A stretch of DNA of 63,851 nt, filler included, from Octopus bimaculoides (taxonomy: Eukaryota), in the NCBI RefSeq assembly GCF_001194135.2. It is 4 parts of 4 records of this genome, joined end to end, with 100 filler letters (N's around TTAATTAATTAA, not from the genome) between each part and the next. Parts side by side here need not be neighbours in the genome. Positions count along the whole stretch, not along the records: positions 1 to 26,313 come from NC_068994.1; 3 more parts are not named here. One strand, written 5' to 3'. The position numbers and the translations under genes were made by a program. Within the stretch, counting starts at the first letter, position 1. Each line of letters begins with the position of its first letter. This document shows positions 16,248 to 26,313 of the stretch, piece after piece. Under the pieces are notes generated by a model. That model was not told where the DNA came from and ran no database searches. It saw only the letters and a list, made by a program, of their open reading frames with translations.

Positions 16248-16336
16248 NNNNNNNNNNNNNNNNNNNNNNNNNNNNNNNNNNNNNNNNNNNNNNNNNNNNN
16301 NNNNNNNNNNNNNNNNNNNNNNNNNNNNNNNNNNNN

Positions 16337-16561: not shown

Positions 16562-16916
16562 TATATATATGAGGGACTTCTTTTTAGGTTCTGTGTATGA
16601 AATCCACCCACAAGGCTTTAGTAGAAAGGGTTTGCCCAAGGTGCCACACGGTGGGACTGAACCTGGAACCATTAAGTTGGGAAGCAAAATTCTCACTAGG
16701 CAGCTGCACCAGTTTATGAAATTAATTAGGGTGGAGGTGTATCCATGATTCATTATATCTAAATATATAAGTTTTGGGACAAACATGGGTGTATTTCAGA
16801 ATGTATTTACTTTAATTGGTGCCATAGTTGCACATGTGGAACATCTGCCGTAGTACAAGTACCACAAGCACCTGCATCTATGGTGAAATGGCAAAAATAC
16901 AGCTTGCAGACATGTG

Positions 16917-17114: not shown

Positions 17115-17145
<31 letters not shown>

Positions 17146-17159
17146 TGTCATCATCATTT

Positions 17160-17345
17160 AAAGTCCATTTTCCATGCTGGCATGGGCTGGATGATTTGAC
17201 AAGGGCCGGCAGGGCTGGAGGGCTCTGCCAAGCTCTATTGTTTGTTTTGGAATGGTTTCTATGGCTGGATGCCCTTCCTAAAGCCAACCACTTTGCAGAG
17301 TGTACTGGGTGCATTTTTCCTGGCACCAGCACCAACAGGGTCACT
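17160..17345. mobile_element. Interspersed SINE-like repeat (GGATGCCCTTCCTAA.GCCAACC family)
   Basis: The same motif set recurs near 2625-2770, 7040-7075 (opposite strand) and 14155-14390, usually abutting (CAT)n tracts. Confidence 0.7.
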
Positions 17346-19738: not shown

Positions 19739-20594
19739 NNNNNNNNNNNNNNNNNNNNNNNNNNNNNNNNNNNNNNNNNNNNNNNNNNNNNNNNNNNNNN
19801 NNNNNNNNNNNNNNNNNNNNNNNNNNNNNNNNNNNNNNNNNNNNNNNNNNNNNNNNNNNNNNNNNNNNNNNNNNNNNNNNNNNNNNNNNNNNNNNNNNNN
19901 NNNNNNNNNNNNNNNNNNNNNNNNNNNNNNNNNNNNNNNNNNNNNNNNNNNNNNNNNNNNNNNNNNNNNNNNNNNNNNNNNNNNNNNNNNNNNNNNNNNN
20001 NNNNNNNNNNNNNNNNNNNNNNNNNNNNNNNNNNNNNNNNNNNNNNNNNNNNNNNNNNNNNNNNNNNNNNNNNNNNNNNNNNNNNNNNNNNNNNNNNNNN
20101 NNNNNNNNNNNNNNNNNNNNNNNNNNNNNNNNNNNNNNNNNNNNNNNNNNNNNNNNNNNNNNNNNNNNNNNNNNNNNNNNNNNNNNNNNNNNNNNNNNNN
20201 NNNNNNNNNNNNNNNNNNNNNNNNNNNNNNNNNNNNNNNNNNNNNNNNNNNNNNNNNNNNNNNNNNNNNNNNNNNNNNNNNNNNNNNNNNNNNNNNNNNN
20301 NNNNNNNNNNNNNNNNNNNNNNNNNNNNNNNNNNNNNNNNNNNNNNNNNNNNNNNNNNNNNNNNNNNNNNNNNNNNNNNNNNNNNNNNNNNNNNNNNNNN
20401 NNNNNNNNNNNNNNNNNNNNNNNNNNNNNNNNNNNNNNNNNNNNNNNNNNNNNNNNNNNNNNNNNNNNNNNNNNNNNNNNNNNNNNNNNNNNNNNNNNNN
20501 NNNNNNNNNNNNNNNNNNNNNNNNNNNNNNNNNNNNNNNNNNNNNNNNNNNNNNNNNNNNNNNNNNNNNNNNNNNNNNNNNNNNNNNNNNNNNN

Positions 20595-20630
<36 letters not shown>

Positions 20631-22395
20631 ATGATGACCACTAAAGTGGACATTTAATGTGCTAGAAATAGACCACATGTTGTGTCTATTAAGACCTAAT
20701 AGTTCTCAAAAGAAATTCAGCGAAATACGAAACTGTAAGCGAGCAAGACAGTGAAAATTACTTACGTAAAATTAAAACATTGTTATTCGCGGATCGGTTT
20801 CGGAATTAAAATTCTCTTACCGAGAAAATCTGTCCCTCTTCAGCGCGAACTGCAAGGAAGTTATAATTATAATATCACAAACTGCAGCCATACTGGGGCA
20901 CCACCTTGAAGAATCTTTCGTCAACTGAATTGACTTCATTACTTTTTGGTTTTAAAGTCTGGTACTTACTCTCTCAGCGTGAAGGGTAGATATGCAGACA
21001 CAAAGAAGCACATACACATGCACACATATATATATATATATATATACGTGATGGGCTTCCTTCAGTTTCCATCTAACAAATCCAGGCACAGGGCTTTGGT
21101 CCACCGAAAACCATAGTCAAAGACACTTGTCCTGGGTACCGTGCAATGCGAGTGAACATGGAACCATATGGTTGGCAAGAAAGCTTCTTACCACACAGCC
21201 AAGCCAAAAATTTATTTTTGAGAAATATTATTAATAATAATATATTTTCCCTAATAATTTAAACAGGAATGTAAATTAATAATAAAATATTAAATTAATT
21301 TTTAATTGCAGTCATATTATTTTGACTGAGATTCTATAACAAATAAAAATCTCACATCTTTAATGAATGTTTTTTTTTTCAATAATCATACAGAAAATAT
21401 GCAAATTAATTAATTAGTTTTTATAAAAGCATAAAACATTTTATTTCATTTCAGCTCGTGTGCAGCAATATTTTATTAACCAAAGCAGAGAACAAACAAA
21501 CAGTTATAAACCTACTTAATGAACAGGAGTCATGACNNNNNNNNNNNNNNNNNNNNNNNNNNNNNNNNNNNNNNNNNNNNNNNNNNNNNNNNNNNNNNNN
21601 NNNNNNNNNNNNNNNNNNNNNNNNNNNNNNNNNNNNNNNNNNNNNNNNNNNNNNNACCACCACCATTACTCTGCCAGACATTTCTGTTTTGCCGCCTTCT
21701 TCCATCAGCACCTGCACCATTACCCTACCTCCACTCCACCTCTCCTCTCTGATTCTAGTTCTTCAAGACTGGTCACATCTCAGAAATGTCAGCAAAATTT
21801 CTAACAAGATTTCTTTCAGGTCAACTCAAACAGTTTACAATAAAGTATTTATTTACACAAAAAGCTGATAAAATGTGAAAGTGGGTTCCAATTACCAATT
21901 TTCACATGTGTTCTGGGGAGAAGGAGAGGAACATCTTTAATCTGCATTTTGCTTCTTTTTTTGGTTTTTAGTTTATATTTTAGAATTTTTATTCTTATTT
22001 TTGCTTTGTCATTTGTTTGTTTGTTTTTTCTAGTTCTTTTCTCTTCTCACTTTGTTTATTCTTCCTATTTATGCTGCTTAGGTGATTTTTTTATTATCAT
22101 TATTATTATTGTCATTATTCATATTTTTTTCATTCATTCATTTTTTTTTTTTTCTTTTAAATTCCTTGAGAAAAGTGCTTGCTATATTTCTACGACAAGC
22201 ATGACAACCAAATTTATTCTATCACACTCGTCCTCGCCCCACTGAGGAAGACAAAGATAAGACTTAAAGTCAGTCACTCTGATGCTATAATAATTCAGTC
22301 GGTCCACTATTTACTTGTATCTGCTTCACTCCCAGACAGAAGCAGATCTTTCAACTGAAGCTGAAAGGCCACAAACACGGATTCTGCTTGAACAA

Positions 22396-22429
22396 CTTAC
22401 CCTGGTTATAGTTATATCTTTTTTTGCAG
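22396..22429 (+). promoter_or_regulatory. Probable 3' splice acceptor of a 5'-UTR intron of the double-CRD gene
   Basis: Branch-point-like CTTAC at 22396-22400, pyrimidine tract and TTTTTTTGCAG ending at 22429, 69 nt upstream of the ATG. Confidence 0.6.
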
Positions 22430-22498
22430 ACTACCAAAGAAATTTATTTCTATATTCTGAAAAATACTTCACCACTTTGGATACTATAAGCCATTACA

Positions 22499-23488
22499 AT
22501 GCTGGCTAAAAATTATTTAATCTACCTTCTTTTGGCAACCCTCTTAATTATGGCTGTTATCCAGCCAGGAAATGCTAAGAAAAAGAGGAAAAAGTCAAGG
22601 AAAAGAAAACGACCCAAACAAGTGGAATCTTACAACACGACAACCTGTACTAAGATAATGCTGCCAATGTGCCGGAATTTAATTCCTTATTCAGATACTC
22701 AATTAACAATGAAAAAAGAAGGAGTTTTAATGACCCAAGGCCAATTGTCAGCTCTGATTGAACCACTCTGGGCATTTATGGATACTGAATGCTCTTCACA
22801 TTTCCGGCTGCTGGCATGTGGTTATTATCTGCCAAAATGCCACCCTACAACAGGTAATCCAATGCTGCCTTGTAGGTCTCTGTGCAGAGATGCTAAAAAG
22901 GAATGTTCTAGAACTTTTAATAGACACAGTATAAAGTGGCCTAACGAGCTGAAATGCACCAATTTCCCAACCAAAAACTGTGTGAGTTCATCAGACAACA
23001 CTCATGTTAAATCTGTTGTAGACACTGGATCAAGATGTATCCTCAACGTTATTCCAATGTGTGCCAACCTTACTTCAAACATCACTCCAGTTAAGAAATA
23101 TATGTTTGGAGTCCTACCTAACATGTTTCTACAAAATTCTCCAGGACAGATTTTCAAAGAAATGAATAATTTCAAAGAACTTGTTGAATCAAATTGCTCA
23201 CCAAATATTGCTTTCTTTGTCTGTGGCGTTTACTTACCATTCTGCACTGGCAACGAAGGTACTGATGGATTCCGCGTGCCATGCAAAGAAGTGTGTGACG
23301 AAGTTTTCGCAGCATGTGAAACTAAGTTGCTTGAAATCACCGGAGTTAACTGGCCTAGTAAATTCCAGTGCCATCGCTATCCTTCAAGGGAATCTACTAG
23401 AAACCGTTTGAAATGTCTGGAAGCTGATCAATTGGATATTGTACGAAAAGCTGCACTCCCTTCTCTAAACAAGACTGAAACTAACTAG
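22499..23488 (+). CDS. Secreted protein with two tandem Frizzled cysteine-rich domains (sFRP-like but lacking NTR), 329 aa, intronless CDS
   Basis: Uninterrupted ORF. ATG is in good context (ACAATG) with an in-frame TAA 9 nt upstream (22487-22489). Residues 1-26 look like a signal peptide (LIYLLLATLLIMAVIQPGNA), followed by KKKRKKSRKRKRPK. CRD1 (C50-C161) and CRD2 (C180-C306) each have 10 Cys with Fz spacing and Fz motifs (C..LPMC, CS..F..L.C..Y.PKC, PCRSLC, WP..L.C..FP; LPNMF, CSPNIAFFVCGVYLPFC, PCKEVC, WPSKFQC..YP). No TM segment follows CRD2. N-glycosylation sequons at N46, N190, N194, N232 and N324. Confidence 0.93.
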   Translation: MLAKNYLIYLLLATLLIMAVIQPGNAKKKRKKSRKRKRPKQVESYNTTTCTKIMLPMCRNLIPYSDTQLTMKKEGVLMTQGQLSALIEPLWAFMDTECSSHFRLLACGYYLPKCHPTTGNPMLPCRSLCRDAKKECSRTFNRHSIKWPNELKCTNFPTKNCVSSSDNTHVKSVVDTGSRCILNVIPMCANLTSNITPVKKYMFGVLPNMFLQNSPGQIFKEMNNFKELVESNCSPNIAFFVCGVYLPFCTGNEGTDGFRVPCKEVCDEVFAACETKLLEITGVNWPSKFQCHRYPSRESTRNRLKCLEADQLDIVRKAALPSLNKTETN

Positions 23489-23809
23489 CATTACCAACCA
23501 AATATTTTCTAGAAAGGAAACGCTAAGCTATCTTTTATTCAATCTTTATTTCATGCTACTAGAATCTGCAAACATGCAAACGTCCATATATATACATATA
23601 CATATACATACATATATACATACATACGTGCACACAGGCAACCACATACATACACGATTTTTGTTAAATGCAACTAACATACTAAATACACTTTATTTAA
23701 TTAATTGCTTTTTTTTCCCCAATACATGAATTTCTTCACATATCGTATTTTCCTTCAATCTTTGGTTAATAGTAGTAATAATAACAATAGTAATAATAAC
23801 AACAATAAC

Positions 23810-23877
<68 letters not shown>

Positions 23878-24021
23878 CAATAATGATGATAATGATAATT
23901 TAAAGGAAGAAATGTTTGATAAACTTCTGCAACAACAAAGTAAATGATAATATTTATATATATTTTAAACCCATCATCATTATTAAAAAAATTAACAGTT
24001 ATTCATAAAAGAAAGCAGGAA

Positions 24022-24027
24022 AATAAA
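24022..24027 (+). promoter_or_regulatory. Candidate polyadenylation signal for the double-CRD gene
   Basis: First AATAAA I found downstream of the stop codon, about 530 nt after it. The true 3' end could lie further downstream. Confidence 0.3.
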
Positions 24028-25232: not shown

Positions 25233-26313
25233 CAGACAGACAGATAATCCAATGAAAGGAAAAAGAAGACAAAGAAAATTTTTTAACACATCTTTAATTA
25301 TAAGTTATAATTAAAGATGAGCTGAGGGACCCTGTATGTGGTCATGTAACTTATAAGAAATAGCAGCCAGAACTTCTTCAAATTTTACCCAAGCATTTTT
25401 AAATGAAGATAAAGTAGTATTAGGTGTTCCTGAAAAAAAAAAAGGTAGGATGGTCATGATTGGAACGCTTTGGGTGGTAGGCTTGTCTGTTGATATCAGA
25501 ACAGACCCAAGAGATAAACAACAATAACTAAATGTATCTTTAGCATAAATTTTCTATAGTTTTGCAATGAGTTGGATTTTCCACACGTCTAAGACAATCC
25601 TTAGATAATAGTAAAAAGGTGGGATGGTCATGGCTGGAAGACTTTCGATTATACATCTGTCTATTCAGAAAAACAACAAGGGCAATTATATTCGTCTTTA
25701 GCTTTTATTTCAACAATCTTTAACCGGGGGGAATTTCCCATCTCGTTTGAAATTACCAAAATATGACAAAATTTGGGAATTCCAGGCAGGATATTATTTT
25801 TTAGTTTGAAAAGCTCTCACAAAGACAATCCCCCGCCCCACTGATTTTGCTAAATTTCTCTCTTTTTCTTTATTGCATTTTCTTTGCAACAGTCATTAAA
25901 CTGTGGCCATGCTGGGGCACCATCTTAGTAAAATGACTCAATCCCAGTACATTTTTTTTTTTTAAACCTGGTACATATTCTATCAGATTCTGCAGCTGAA
26001 GTGCTAAATTACAGGGACATAAACACACCAACACCAGATGTCAAGTGGTAGCGAGACACACACACACACACACATACATATTTATATTAAAGGGCTTCTT
26101 TCAATTTCCGTCTACCAAATCCACTCACAAAGCTTTGGTCAGCCCAAGGCTATAATAGAAGACACATGCCCATATATGCATACACATATATATATGTGTG
26201 TATATATATATGTGTGTATATATATATGTGTGTATATATATATGTGTGTTTATATTTATGTATTTGTATCTCTGTGTTTGTCCCTCCCCGACACCATCGC
26301 TTGACAACTGATG

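What the first reader, a model, noticed from the sequence alone, without database searches (positions are those of the whole stretch)
22499..23488. Secreted protein made only of two tandem Frizzled CRDs: candidate unusual extracellular Wnt-pathway modulator
Seen: signal peptide, polybasic stretch, two complete 10-Cys Fz CRDs, an 18-aa linker and a short tail, with no TM, NTR or protease domain. The in-frame stop just upstream of the ATG means it is not simply an internal exon of a corin-like gene spliced at the adjacent acceptor. Established: known Fz-CRD families are Frizzled/Smoothened (7TM), sFRP/Crescent/Sizzled (one CRD plus NTR), corin (two CRDs plus LDLa, SRCR and protease, membrane-anchored), CPZ, MFRP, ROR/MuSK and collagen XVIII. 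I do not recall a characterised family that is a soluble CRD-CRD dimer alone. Inference: it could be a bivalent Wnt trap, a Wnt carrier, or a bridge between Wnt and Fz or another ligand, possibly lineage-specific to cephalopods or molluscs.
Basis: partly seen in the sequence, partly recalled or inferred. Interest (0 to 1): 0.85.

Follow-up and report, generated by a model that had tools for sequence, protein, structure and literature searches.

The report
Secreted two-Frizzled-domain protein of molluscs
The ORF is a real, stand-alone octopus gene for a secreted protein made of two Frizzled-type cysteine-rich domains; it belongs to an uncharacterised family found in all named mollusc classes sampled and probably modulates Wnt signals outside the cell, though nobody has tested that.

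Summary
Window 22499-23488 (+) is an intact 329-codon ORF. It encodes a signal-peptide-like N-terminus, a polybasic stretch (12 of 15 K/R), two complete 10-Cys Fz domains 18 residues apart, and a 23-residue tail. There is no NTR, 7TM, LDLa or protease domain.

It is not an exon of a longer gene. Stops bound it on both sides. RefSeq models in Octopus sinensis, Argonauta and Haliotis have the same single-exon CDS. A cephalopod cDNA contig and a spliced bivalve mRNA contig encode only this protein.

It belongs to a conserved, apparently mollusc-specific orthogroup seen in cephalopods, gastropods, bivalves and a chiton. All 20 Cys are invariant, and CRD2 carries the signature WPSKFQCHRYP. All database names are automatic or "uncharacterized", and I found no paper on the family.

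Within Octopus the gene evolves fairly fast but under purifying selection (dN/dS 0.43-0.52).

Both CRDs look more like receptor and sFRP3 CRDs than Sizzled or Smoothened CRDs, and CRD1 is closest to Fz5/8. A secreted Wnt-binding modulator is the best inference, but it is untested.

The concept has precedents: sea urchin sFRP-1 (four tandem CRDs, no NTR, a Wnt antagonist) and Platynereis FzCRD-1. This is therefore a new variant of a known kind, of moderate interest.

The parts
22286..22293 (+). Candidate TATA-like element (TATAATAA), about 205 nt upstream of the ATG
   Evidence: Read from the sequence. Conserved in O. sinensis, and as TATAACAA in a second octopod. Function not shown.
22417..22429 (+). 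Polypyrimidine tract plus AG: candidate 3' splice site of a possible 5'-UTR intron
   Evidence: Sequence ...tctttttttgcag|actacc. The AG is conserved in three octopod sequences. Whether it is used cannot be told without RNA-seq. It lies upstream of the in-frame stop, so it cannot extend the protein.
22487..22489 (+). In-frame TAA stop three codons upstream of the start codon
22499..23488 (+). Complete single-exon CDS (329 codons plus stop) of the secreted tandem-CRD protein
   Evidence: 87% aa identity to the O. sinensis 328-aa RefSeq protein. dN/dS 0.52, p=0.009.
22499..22576 (+). Signal peptide (aa 1-26, MLAKNYLIYLLLATLLIMAVIQPGNA, predicted cleavage after G-N-A)
   Evidence: The only hydrophobic segment in the protein. 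The h-region is about 15 residues, with small residues at -3 and -1. This is inferred, because no SignalP was available.
22577..22618 (+). Polybasic segment (aa 27-40, KKKRKKSRKRKRPK)
   Evidence: A basic or Arg/Asn-rich segment recurs in most family members, after the signal peptide or in the linker. Glycosaminoglycan binding is an inference.
22646..22981 (+). CRD1 (Cys50-Cys161), Fz5/8-like Frizzled cysteine-rich domain
   Evidence: Pfam Fz. The family profile scores best against Fz5 (119 bits) and Fz8 (114 bits) CRDs in the PDB. AF2 pLDDT is about 90. Foldseek TM 0.8-0.86 to Fz CRDs.
22982..23035 (+). 18-residue inter-domain linker (aa 162-179)
   Evidence: Poorly conserved, with low pLDDT at 172-176.
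23036..23416 (+). CRD2 (Cys180-Cys306), a divergent Frizzled cysteine-rich domain with the family signature WPSKFQCHRYP and a cephalopod-specific insert (aa ~193-209)
   Evidence: Pfam Fz. The profile scores nearly equally against Fz8, Fz2, Fz7, Fz4 and Fz5 CRDs, at 95-90 bits. Signature and insert. The insert has pLDDT below 50.
23417..23485 (+). C-terminal tail (aa 307-329), unstructured, with an NKT sequon
   Evidence: Too short to hold an NTR or any other domain.
24022..24027 (+). First + strand AATAAA downstream of the stop codon: candidate polyadenylation signal (3' UTR about 540 nt)
   Evidence: This is weak evidence in AT-rich DNA. It is compatible with the 3' UTR of at least 660 nt in the cephalopod cDNA contig L004.

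Best explanation
Shown:
- Window 22499-23488 is an intact protein-coding gene with a single coding exon, from an Octopus species.
- Its product has one N-terminal hydrophobic segment, a polybasic stretch and two different Frizzled-type cysteine-rich domains joined by an 18-residue linker, and nothing else.
- It is the cephalopod member of an orthologous family present in cephalopods, gastropods, bivalves and a chiton. Every named member found is a mollusc.
- The family is under purifying selection and is transcribed as a stand-alone mRNA.

Inferred:
- The N-terminus is a cleaved signal peptide. The mature protein would be about 34.5 kDa with pI about 9.3, a glycoprotein that is secreted.
- The basic segment holds it on heparan-sulfate proteoglycans or matrix, playing the part that the heparin-binding NTR plays in sFRPs.
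- Each CRD offers a Frizzled-like surface and a partly preserved hydrophobic groove for the palmitoleate of a Wnt.
- The protein therefore competes with Frizzled receptors for Wnt ligands, or binds Frizzled CRDs themselves. It would act as a local, possibly bivalent extracellular modulator of Wnt signalling, most likely an antagonist, as sFRP3/FrzB and sea urchin sFRP-1 do.
For: Gene reality:
- ORF, flanking stops and two Fz domains.
- P(330 open codons) by chance is about 2e-8.
- Orthologues of 286-383 aa with the same architecture occur in 14 named mollusc species.
- All 20 Cys are invariant.
- dN/dS is 0.52 (p=0.009) and 0.43 (p=4e-6) against two other octopods.

Stand-alone transcript:
- L004 begins with the SMART oligo GTGGTATCAACGCAGAGTACGGGG. 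It carries only this ORF, with a 5' UTR of about 78 nt and a 3' UTR of at least 660 nt.
- Pectinid contig L010 is spliced relative to the Ylistrum genome and carries only this ORF.

Orthogroup:
- CRD1- and CRD2-specific HMMs score 147-166 and 138-184 bits on full-length members, against about 50-80 bits on the other domain. They score 111 bits or less, without discrimination, on every other multi-CRD protein of 500 aa or less tabulated.

Secretion:
- The only hydrophobic segment is residues 1-26, and there are five N-glycosylation sequons.

Frizzled-like CRDs:
- CRD1 profile against the PDB: Fz5 119 bits, Fz8 114, Fz10 100, Fz7 and Fz2 97-98, sFRP3 94, Fz4 93, Sizzled 60, Smoothened 48.
- CRD2 profile: Fz8 95, Fz2 93, Fz7, Fz4 and Fz5 about 91, sFRP3 80, Sizzled 69, Smoothened 28.
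- The AF2 model has pLDDT about 90 in both CRD cores and pTM 0.69. Foldseek gives TM 0.80-0.86 to Fz8, Fz5, Fz7, Fz4 and sFRP3 CRDs.

Groove positions (mouse Fz8 numbering recalled from Janda et al. 2012, so from memory):
- CRD1 keeps Y48 and, in 15 of 17 members, W73. It has hydrophobic residues at 72 and 122 in all members and at 75 in most.
- CRD2 keeps F/Y72, L75, F86 and hydrophobic 127, and is mostly hydrophobic or aromatic at 122.

Precedent:
- Secreted, NTR-less, four-CRD sea urchin sFRP-1 antagonises Wnt/JNK and Wnt/beta-catenin signalling in vivo (PMC5778778).
Against: - No binding, expression-pattern or loss-of-function data exist for any member.
- dN/dS of 0.4-0.5 is high for a core developmental Wnt regulator.
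- Several groove positions are changed. In CRD2, W73 becomes a charged or polar residue and I78 becomes S/T. In cephalopod CRD1, I78 becomes T and Y125 becomes H.
- Cephalopod CRD1 has replaced the otherwise conserved P-N-x-F-x-H motif with MKKEGVL.
- CRD2 carries a cephalopod-specific insert that AF2 cannot place.
- Fz-type CRDs can have non-Wnt ligands. Known examples, from my own knowledge, are Sizzled with Tolloid, Smoothened with sterols, and Fz4 with Norrin.
- The signal peptide was judged by eye, not by a predictor.
Confidence: 0.55

Rival explanations
1. It is a secreted tandem-CRD protein whose real ligand is not Wnt. Options are a fatty-acid or sterol carrier, an inhibitor of an extracellular protease (as Sizzled's CRD inhibits Tolloid), a binder of another cystine-knot ligand, or an immune or surface-recognition factor.
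For: - It evolves fairly fast: dN/dS 0.43-0.52.
- Several lipid-groove positions have diverged, and CRD2 is about equally distant from all receptor CRDs.
- Cephalopod-specific inserts and loss of the PNxFxH motif in CRD1.
- Conserved linkage to an ARM/TIR_2 (SARM1-like, innate-immunity type) gene in Octopus, Haliotis and Gigantopelta.
- That Fz-type CRDs can have non-Wnt ligands is established knowledge, recalled from memory.
Against: - Both CRDs score far higher against Wnt-binding receptor and sFRP3 CRDs (90-119 bits) than against Sizzled (60-69) or Smoothened (28-48).
- Y48 is invariant, W73 nearly so, and hydrophobic residues at 72, 122 and mostly 75 are kept in CRD1.
- Gene linkage alone says nothing about function.
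Confidence: 0.3
2. The protein is a Wnt carrier or agonist rather than an antagonist. The two CRDs close over one Wnt acyl chain, like the lipid-bridged CRD dimers seen in crystals, and so keep Wnt soluble and extend its range.
For: - Two CRDs on a short 18-residue tether.
- pTM of 0.69 for a two-domain model hints at a defined mutual orientation.
- The PDB holds Fz5 CRD with palmitoleate and Fz7 CRD with a C24 fatty acid (5URY, 5URV). My recollection is that the lipid bridges two CRDs in these structures.
- From my own knowledge, sFRPs can expand Wnt range at low dose.
Against: - I could not inspect the model's inter-domain contacts.
- The CRD2 groove has lost W73.
- The polybasic segment argues for retention near the source rather than long-range transport.
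Confidence: 0.1
3. The ORF is an internal or terminal exon of a larger gene: either the surrounding ARM/TIR_2 host gene or a corin-like gene that adds TM or protease domains.
For: - In O. sinensis the orthologue lies inside the span of a 664-aa ARM/TIR_2 gene model on the same strand.
- A polypyrimidine-AG lies 70 nt upstream of the ATG.
- One orthologue is auto-named 'atrial natriuretic peptide-converting enzyme-like'.
Against: - An in-frame TAA lies between the candidate acceptor and the ATG, and a stop follows the 23-residue tail.
- RefSeq models of 286-383 aa exist in 14 species.
- The cDNA contig with a 5' SMART oligo and the spliced bivalve mRNA contain only this ORF.
- No LDLa, SRCR, trypsin, TIR or ARM match occurs in the ORF or in other window ORFs.
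- ORFs translated from the Haliotis neighbour-gene region (5' part of its ARM/TIR_2 gene) find nothing in the window.
Confidence: 0.03
4. It is a non-functional retrocopy or decaying pseudogene that happens to keep an open frame.
For: - The CDS is intronless in Octopus, Argonauta and Haliotis, while Gigantopelta, Ylistrum and Plakobranchus orthologues have 1-5 introns.
- It sits inside another gene's intron in O. sinensis.
- Constraint is relaxed.
- The window's exact protein is absent from the protein database.
Against: - The frame is intact in five cephalopod sequences, some at saturated synonymous divergence (dS 1.8-2.5), with dN/dS well below 1.
- All 20 Cys are invariant.
- It is the only copy detected in cephalopods, so there is no parent gene.
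- A transcript exists.
Confidence: 0.02

Closest known systems
Sea urchin sFRP-1 (Illies et al. 2002; Khadka et al. 2018, PMC5778778)
   Same: Secreted, with a signal peptide, several tandem Fz-type CRDs each with 10 Cys, no NTR and no TM. It is lineage-restricted (echinoderms) and has been shown to antagonise Wnt signalling. It is the best functional analogue.
   Different: It has four CRDs plus an Ig domain between CRD3 and CRD4. Its CRDs are reported to be related to sFRP3/4, whereas CRD1 here is closest to Fz5/8. It comes from a different phylum, is not an orthologue, and has no reported polybasic segment.
sFRP3/4 (FrzB) and sFRP1/2/5 (secreted Frizzled-related proteins)
   Same: Secreted Fz-CRD proteins that bind Wnts and Fz CRDs. 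They are heparin-binding. The sFRP3 CRD scores 94 bits (CRD1 profile) and 80 bits (CRD2 profile).
   Different: sFRPs have one CRD plus a C-terminal NTR domain. Here there are two CRDs and no NTR. Sizzled, the sFRP1/2/5-type relative with a solved structure, is a much weaker match (60-69 bits).
Platynereis FzCRD-1, -2 and -3 (Bastin et al. 2015, PMC4669655)
   Same: Lophotrochozoan, secreted, CRD-only Frizzled-related proteins without an NTR. They are proposed Wnt modulators with spatially restricted embryonic expression.
   Different: Each has a single CRD. They are reported as unique to Platynereis, and FzCRD-1 groups with sFRP3/4. They are not the same orthogroup.
Frizzled-5/8 receptors
   Same: CRD1 is most similar to the Fz5 and Fz8 CRDs by sequence and by fold.
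   Different: There is no linker or 7TM domain and no intracellular part. A second, divergent CRD takes the place of the membrane part.
Corin (atrial natriuretic peptide-converting enzyme)
   Same: It contains two Fz CRDs, and one orthologue is auto-named after it.
   Different: Corin is a type II membrane protease with LDLa repeats between and after the CRDs, an SRCR domain and a trypsin domain. None of these is present here. A direct comparison with corin CRDs was not possible.
Uncharacterised multi-CRD proteins in databases (Penaeus, Meganyctiphanes, Antedon, Montipora, Orbicella, Oryzias; a second two-CRD protein in Littorina)
   Same: Predicted proteins built mainly of tandem Fz CRDs, showing that CRD arrays arise repeatedly.
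   Different: They are not orthologues. Those of 500 aa or less that were tabulated score 111 bits or less against the CRD1 and CRD2 HMMs, without discrimination. Many have near-identical repeats or extra domains.

Membership tests
Frizzled-type cysteine-rich domain (Pfam PF01392, Fz) | Profile match above the curated cut-off | tested here: met
   136.7 bits against a cut-off of 32.1, with two domains.
Frizzled-type cysteine-rich domain (Pfam PF01392, Fz) | Ten conserved cysteines per domain | tested here: met
   10 + 10 Cys, invariant in 10 family members.
Frizzled-type cysteine-rich domain (Pfam PF01392, Fz) | Mainly alpha-helical CRD fold | tested here: met
   The AF2 cores have pLDDT about 90. 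Foldseek TM 0.80-0.86 to Fz8, Fz5, Fz7, Fz4 and sFRP3 CRDs.
sFRP (secreted Frizzled-related protein, sensu stricto) | C-terminal netrin-like (NTR) domain | tested here: not met
   No NTR hit even at E<=1. Only 23 residues follow CRD2.
sFRP (secreted Frizzled-related protein, sensu stricto) | Single N-terminal CRD | tested here: not met
   Two CRDs.
sFRP (secreted Frizzled-related protein, sensu stricto) | Signal peptide and no transmembrane segment | tested here: met
   The only hydrophobic segment is residues 1-26, with a G-N-A cleavage-type motif. Judged by inspection, not by SignalP.
Frizzled receptor | Seven-transmembrane Frizzled domain (PF01534) | tested here: not met
   No Pfam hit and no hydrophobic window after residue 26.
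Corin | Type II TM anchor, LDLa repeats, SRCR and trypsin domains | tested here: not met
   None detected. The ORF is bounded by stops.
Sea-urchin-type multi-CRD secreted protein (sFRP-1) | Secreted, two or more tandem Fz CRDs, no NTR | tested here: met
   Architecture of sFRP-1 taken from PMC5778778.
Sea-urchin-type multi-CRD secreted protein (sFRP-1) | Four CRDs with an Ig domain; orthology to echinoderm sFRP-1 | tested here: not met
   Two CRDs and no Ig. All named orthologues are molluscs. A direct sequence comparison with Sp-sFRP-1 was not made.
Pan-molluscan tandem-CRD orthogroup (undescribed; defined here) | Signal peptide, CRD1, short linker, CRD2, with domain-specific HMM discrimination | tested here: met
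   For the window protein: CRD1 162 bits against 62, and CRD2 160 bits against 72.
Pan-molluscan tandem-CRD orthogroup (undescribed; defined here) | CRD2 signature W-P-x-K-[FL]-Q-C-H-R-Y-P | tested here: met
   WPSKFQCHRYP at aa 285-295. W, P, K, Q, C, H, R, Y and P are invariant in the 10-sequence alignment.
Wnt-binding proteins (functional class) | Direct binding of a lipidated Wnt | not testable with these tools
   Only partial conservation of the groove residues could be scored.

The most novel reading that the evidence does not exclude
Molluscs possess their own ancient extracellular Wnt regulator. Two non-equivalent CRDs on a short tether would act together, either enclosing one Wnt acyl chain in an intramolecular 'CRD dimer' or bridging a Wnt to a Frizzled. 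This would give a mode of Wnt control (carrier, range-shaper or bivalent clamp) different from the one-CRD-plus-NTR sFRPs. It may compensate for the repeated loss or divergence of sFRP3/4 reported in lophotrochozoans.
Probability: 0.12. Interest if true: 0.7.

Novelty: new variant of a known kind. Interest (0 to 1): 0.45.

Why it matters
Wnt signalling patterns the axes, nervous system and shell field of molluscs. The known extracellular antagonists (sFRPs, Dkk) are unevenly retained in lophotrochozoans. sFRP3/4 is reported as lost or highly divergent in several molluscs and annelids (PMC4669655).

A conserved, phylum-wide, secreted two-CRD protein is an obvious candidate for a missing regulator, and it has not been named or studied. 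It is small, intronless in octopus and easy to express, so the hypothesis is cheap to test.

If it does not touch Wnt at all, it becomes an example of the Fz CRD being reused for another ligand. Either way the immediate practical value is better annotation. The current names ('protein mom-5', 'frizzled-10-like', 'frizzled-5', 'corin-like') are misleading, and the gene seems to be unannotated in the assembly this window came from.

Tried and rejected
- Profile search of the indexed protein database with the CRD1 alignment. It returned three unnamed fragments. The word index missed even known members, so it gave no named nearest paralogue. I therefore relied on PDB profile scores rather than a proper CRD phylogeny with mollusc Fz, sFRP and corin sequences.
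- Search for exons of the neighbouring ARM/TIR_2 gene in the window, using ORFs translated from the Haliotis neighbour-gene region (its 5' part). No hits.
- Pfam scan of ten other window ORFs, Rfam scan and tRNA scan of the window. Nothing was found.
- Literature searches. A 'two CRDs / tandem CRDs' query was swamped by carbohydrate-recognition domains. Searches on shell matrix or mantle, 'mom-5' with octopus, and the SRA run numbers gave nothing on this family.
- L002 and L003 (Logan contigs) turned out to be collinear with the genome. They give no splicing information.
- AATAAA scan. The first + strand site after the stop is at 24022, which is weak evidence in AT-rich DNA.
- I could not read the AF2 coordinates, so the mutual orientation of the two CRDs and the shape of the grooves remain unexamined.
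- The corin-exon, retro-pseudogene and membrane-anchored readings were considered and rejected (see the rival explanations).
Full report
**1. Observation**

The ORF at window 22499..23488 (+) is real and intact: 329 codons, an ATG start and a TAG stop. An in-frame TAA lies at 22487-22489, three codons upstream of the ATG. Pfam finds two Fz domains (PF01392; E 5.7e-40; 136.7 bits against a curated cut-off of 32.1) and nothing else, with no NTR, 7TM, LDLa, SRCR or trypsin.

The 20 cysteines fall into two sets of ten (50-161 and 180-306), separated by exactly 18 residues and followed by 23 residues. The only hydrophobic stretch is residues 1-26, and KKKRKKSRKRKRPKQ follows it. With 5.3% stop codons on this strand, 330 open codons have a chance probability of about 2e-8 per start. 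Every other ORF of at least 90 aa in the 26 kb is microsatellite-like, spans an assembly gap, or has no Pfam match.

**2. It is a stand-alone gene**

The closest protein is a 328-aa Octopus sinensis RefSeq entry at 87% identity, auto-named 'protein mom-5'. It is followed by a 323-aa Argonauta hians protein at 69% and two unnamed cephalopod sequences at 72% and 58%. In O. sinensis, Argonauta and Haliotis asinina the CDS is one uninterrupted exon of the same length as the protein.

Contig L004 carries the 58% relative. It starts with GTGGTATCAACGCAGAGTACGGGG, the SMART template-switch oligo, so it is cDNA reaching the 5' end of an mRNA. It holds a 5' UTR of about 78 nt, this ORF alone (the true start is the ATG at L004:104) and a 3' UTR of at least 660 nt. 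Contig L010, from a pectinid bivalve, is contiguous where the Ylistrum genome has an intron of about 990 nt. It is therefore a spliced mRNA, and again it holds only the two-CRD ORF.

It could at most belong to a 5'-UTR intron.

**3. A pan-molluscan orthogroup**

Database searches and name look-ups give named members in four classes:

- Cephalopoda: O. sinensis, A. hians.
- Gastropoda: Haliotis, Littorina, Aplysia, Bradybaena, Gigantopelta, Plakobranchus, Lottia.
- Bivalvia: Ylistrum, Argopecten, Pinctada, Mya.
- Polyplacophora: Liolophura.

All are 286-383 aa when complete. In a 10-sequence alignment all 20 Cys are invariant, and CRD2 carries the invariant signature W-P-x-K-x-Q-C-H-R-Y-P.

HMMs built separately from CRD1 and CRD2 discriminate sharply. 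On full-length members the CRD1 model scores 147-166 bits on CRD1, and the CRD2 model scores 138-184 bits on CRD2. Each model scores only about 50-80 bits on the other domain. No other multi-CRD protein of 500 aa or less that was tabulated exceeds 111 bits or shows discrimination.

No named non-mollusc falls in the discriminated set. Several members come from unnamed read-assembly contigs, so a wider distribution cannot be excluded. All source names are 'uncharacterized', 'hypothetical' or automatic guesses (mom-5, frizzled-2/5/10-like, FZD1-like, corin-like).

**4. Evolutionary behaviour**

| Comparison | dN | dS | dN/dS | p |
|---|---|---|---|---|
| O. sinensis | 0.067 | 0.13 | 0.52 | 0.009 |
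| Second octopod (L002) | 0.153 | 0.352 | 0.43 | 4e-6 |

Flanking non-coding DNA is 88-91% identical to O. sinensis, which matches dS. In comparisons with Argonauta and the more distant cephalopod, dS is saturated and dN/dS is well below 1. The gene is therefore constrained, but loosely for a developmental signalling component. CRD2 is the most constrained part (0.36-0.39).

Intron content varies. Octopus, Argonauta and Haliotis have one coding exon, Gigantopelta and Ylistrum have two, and Plakobranchus has six.

**5. What the domains resemble**

| PDB target | CRD1 profile (bits) | CRD2 profile (bits) |
|---|---|---|
| Fz5 | 119 | 91 |
| Fz8 | 114 | 95 |
| Fz10 | 100 | 86 |
| Fz7 and Fz2 | 97-98 | 91-93 |
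| sFRP3 | 94 | 80 |
| Fz4 | 93 | 91 |
| Sizzled | 60 | 69 |
| Smoothened | 48 | 28 |

Each CRD is closer to receptor CRDs than to its partner (about 50-80 bits). The pair is therefore not a recent internal duplication.

AlphaFold2 on the 10-sequence alignment gives mean pLDDT 74.7 and pTM 0.69. Both CRD cores are near 90. The polybasic segment, the linker, the tail and a cephalopod-specific CRD2 insert (193-209) are low. Foldseek returns only Fz5, Fz8, Fz7, Fz4, Fz2, Fz3 and sFRP3 CRDs, with TM up to 0.86.

I aligned the family to the mouse Fz8 CRD and looked at the positions I recall as lining the Wnt palmitoleate groove (Janda et al. 2012; from memory). CRD1 keeps Y48 in all 17 members and W73 in 15 of them. 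It has hydrophobic residues at 72 and 122 in all members and at 75 in most. CRD2 keeps F/Y72, L75, F86 and a hydrophobic 127, and is mostly hydrophobic or aromatic at 122. It replaces W73 with charged or polar residues and I78 with S/T. Cephalopod CRD1 has also replaced the conserved P-N-x-F-x-H segment with MKKEGVL. Lipid or Wnt binding is therefore plausible for both domains but assured for neither.

**6. Most likely mechanism**

Shown: a stand-alone, conserved, transcribed gene whose product has one N-terminal hydrophobic segment, a polybasic stretch and two Frizzled-like CRDs.

Inferred: the N-terminal segment is a cleaved signal peptide, with an h-region of about 15 residues, G-N-A before the basic run, and five N-glycosylation sequons including the conserved N-L-T after Cys2 of CRD2. 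The mature product would be about 34.5 kDa with pI 9.25.

A basic or Arg/Asn-rich stretch recurs across the family, after the signal peptide or within the linker. It would tether the protein to heparan sulfate. The CRDs would compete with Frizzled receptors for Wnts or bind Fz CRDs directly.

By analogy with sFRP3 and with sea urchin sFRP-1, I rate a local Wnt antagonist or modulator as the best explanation (about 0.55). A non-Wnt ligand is the main rival (about 0.3), and a Wnt-carrier 'clamp' is a minority variant (about 0.1). The exon-of-a-larger-gene and pseudogene readings are essentially excluded.

**7. Comparison with what is known**

The protein fails the definition of an sFRP (no NTR, two CRDs), of a Frizzled receptor (no 7TM) and of corin (no TM, LDLa, SRCR or protease).

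The nearest characterised analogue is sea urchin sFRP-1. It is secreted, has four tandem CRDs plus an Ig domain and no NTR, and antagonises Wnt/JNK and Wnt/beta-catenin signalling. That paper also notes 15 further novel Fz-CRD genes in the sea urchin, and that lineage-specific secreted CRD proteins are 'not uncommon' (PMC5778778). Platynereis has three CRD-only genes (PMC4669655).

The representative search also shows many uncharacterised CRD arrays elsewhere:

- Penaeus, 1834 aa, with 11 matched stretches.
- Oryzias, 1379 aa.
- Antedon, Meganyctiphanes, Montipora and Orbicella.
- A second, unrelated two-CRD protein in Littorina.

What is new here is a specific architecture of two heterologous CRDs, conserved as one orthologue across a whole phylum and never described in the papers I could search.

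**8. Verdict**

It is a new variant of a known kind, namely lineage-specific, NTR-less secreted Frizzled-related proteins. Interest is moderate (0.45). It is a clean, cheap-to-test candidate Wnt regulator for molluscs and a clear annotation fix. It is not a categorically new system, and no functional evidence exists yet.

Noticed in passing
L001 (O. sinensis) 1-20987; L005 (Haliotis asinina) 1-6707; L008 (Gigantopelta aegis) 1-711: The tandem-CRD gene keeps the same neighbour in three distant molluscs: an ARM + TIR_2 (SARM1-like) gene of 643-664 aa. In the two gastropods it lies head-to-head, 3.3 kb and 9.3 kb upstream on the opposite strand. In O. sinensis the CRD gene lies inside the span of that gene model on the same strand, so it appears nested in an intron. 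The scallop Ylistrum has PEX11 upstream instead.
   Followed up: partly
window 22499-23488: The window's exact 329-aa protein is not among the hits of the 5.8-billion-cluster protein search; the best hit is the O. sinensis orthologue at 87%. The gene is therefore probably unannotated in the assembly the window comes from.
   Followed up: no
window ~6254-6524, 10587-10868, 11247-11329, 12319-12690, 16562-16704, 17132-17332, 21000-21201, 25878-26172: Copies of one or more short interspersed repeats, on both strands, each matching several places in the O. sinensis locus at 70-87% identity. They look SINE-like. No tRNA-like head was found by ARAGORN.
   Followed up: partly
window 5633-6250, 16248-16336, 19739-20594, 21537-21655: Four assembly gaps (runs of N), each flanked by dinucleotide or tetranucleotide microsatellites (GA/CT, CA/TG, TATG types). 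These produce long spurious 'SLSLSL', 'YIYIYI' and 'HTHTHT' ORFs.
   Followed up: no
window 23780-23900: A long AAT/ATA-type microsatellite about 300 nt downstream of the stop codon reads as a poly-Asn ORF (23705-23947). A (CATA)n-like run lies at 23590-23660, inside the probable 3' UTR.
   Followed up: no
window 22664-22735 (CRD1) and 23075-23125 (CRD2): There are cephalopod-specific changes inside the CRDs. CRD1 replaces the otherwise conserved L-P-N-x-F-x-H segment with TMKKEGVLM. CRD2 has an insert of about 8 residues (SNITPVKKYMF) that AlphaFold cannot place.
   Followed up: partly
proteins P0010, P0011, P0012, P0014, P0016 (not in the window): Very large predicted proteins made almost entirely of tandem Fz CRDs occur in shrimp (1834 aa), medaka (1379 aa), a crinoid, a coral and krill. 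P0012 (Antedon) and several unnamed hits share a conserved C-terminal module ('...GWVDVQGQGAANDYCRV...DGDGRDDYCRC...'). All appear uncharacterised.
   Followed up: partly
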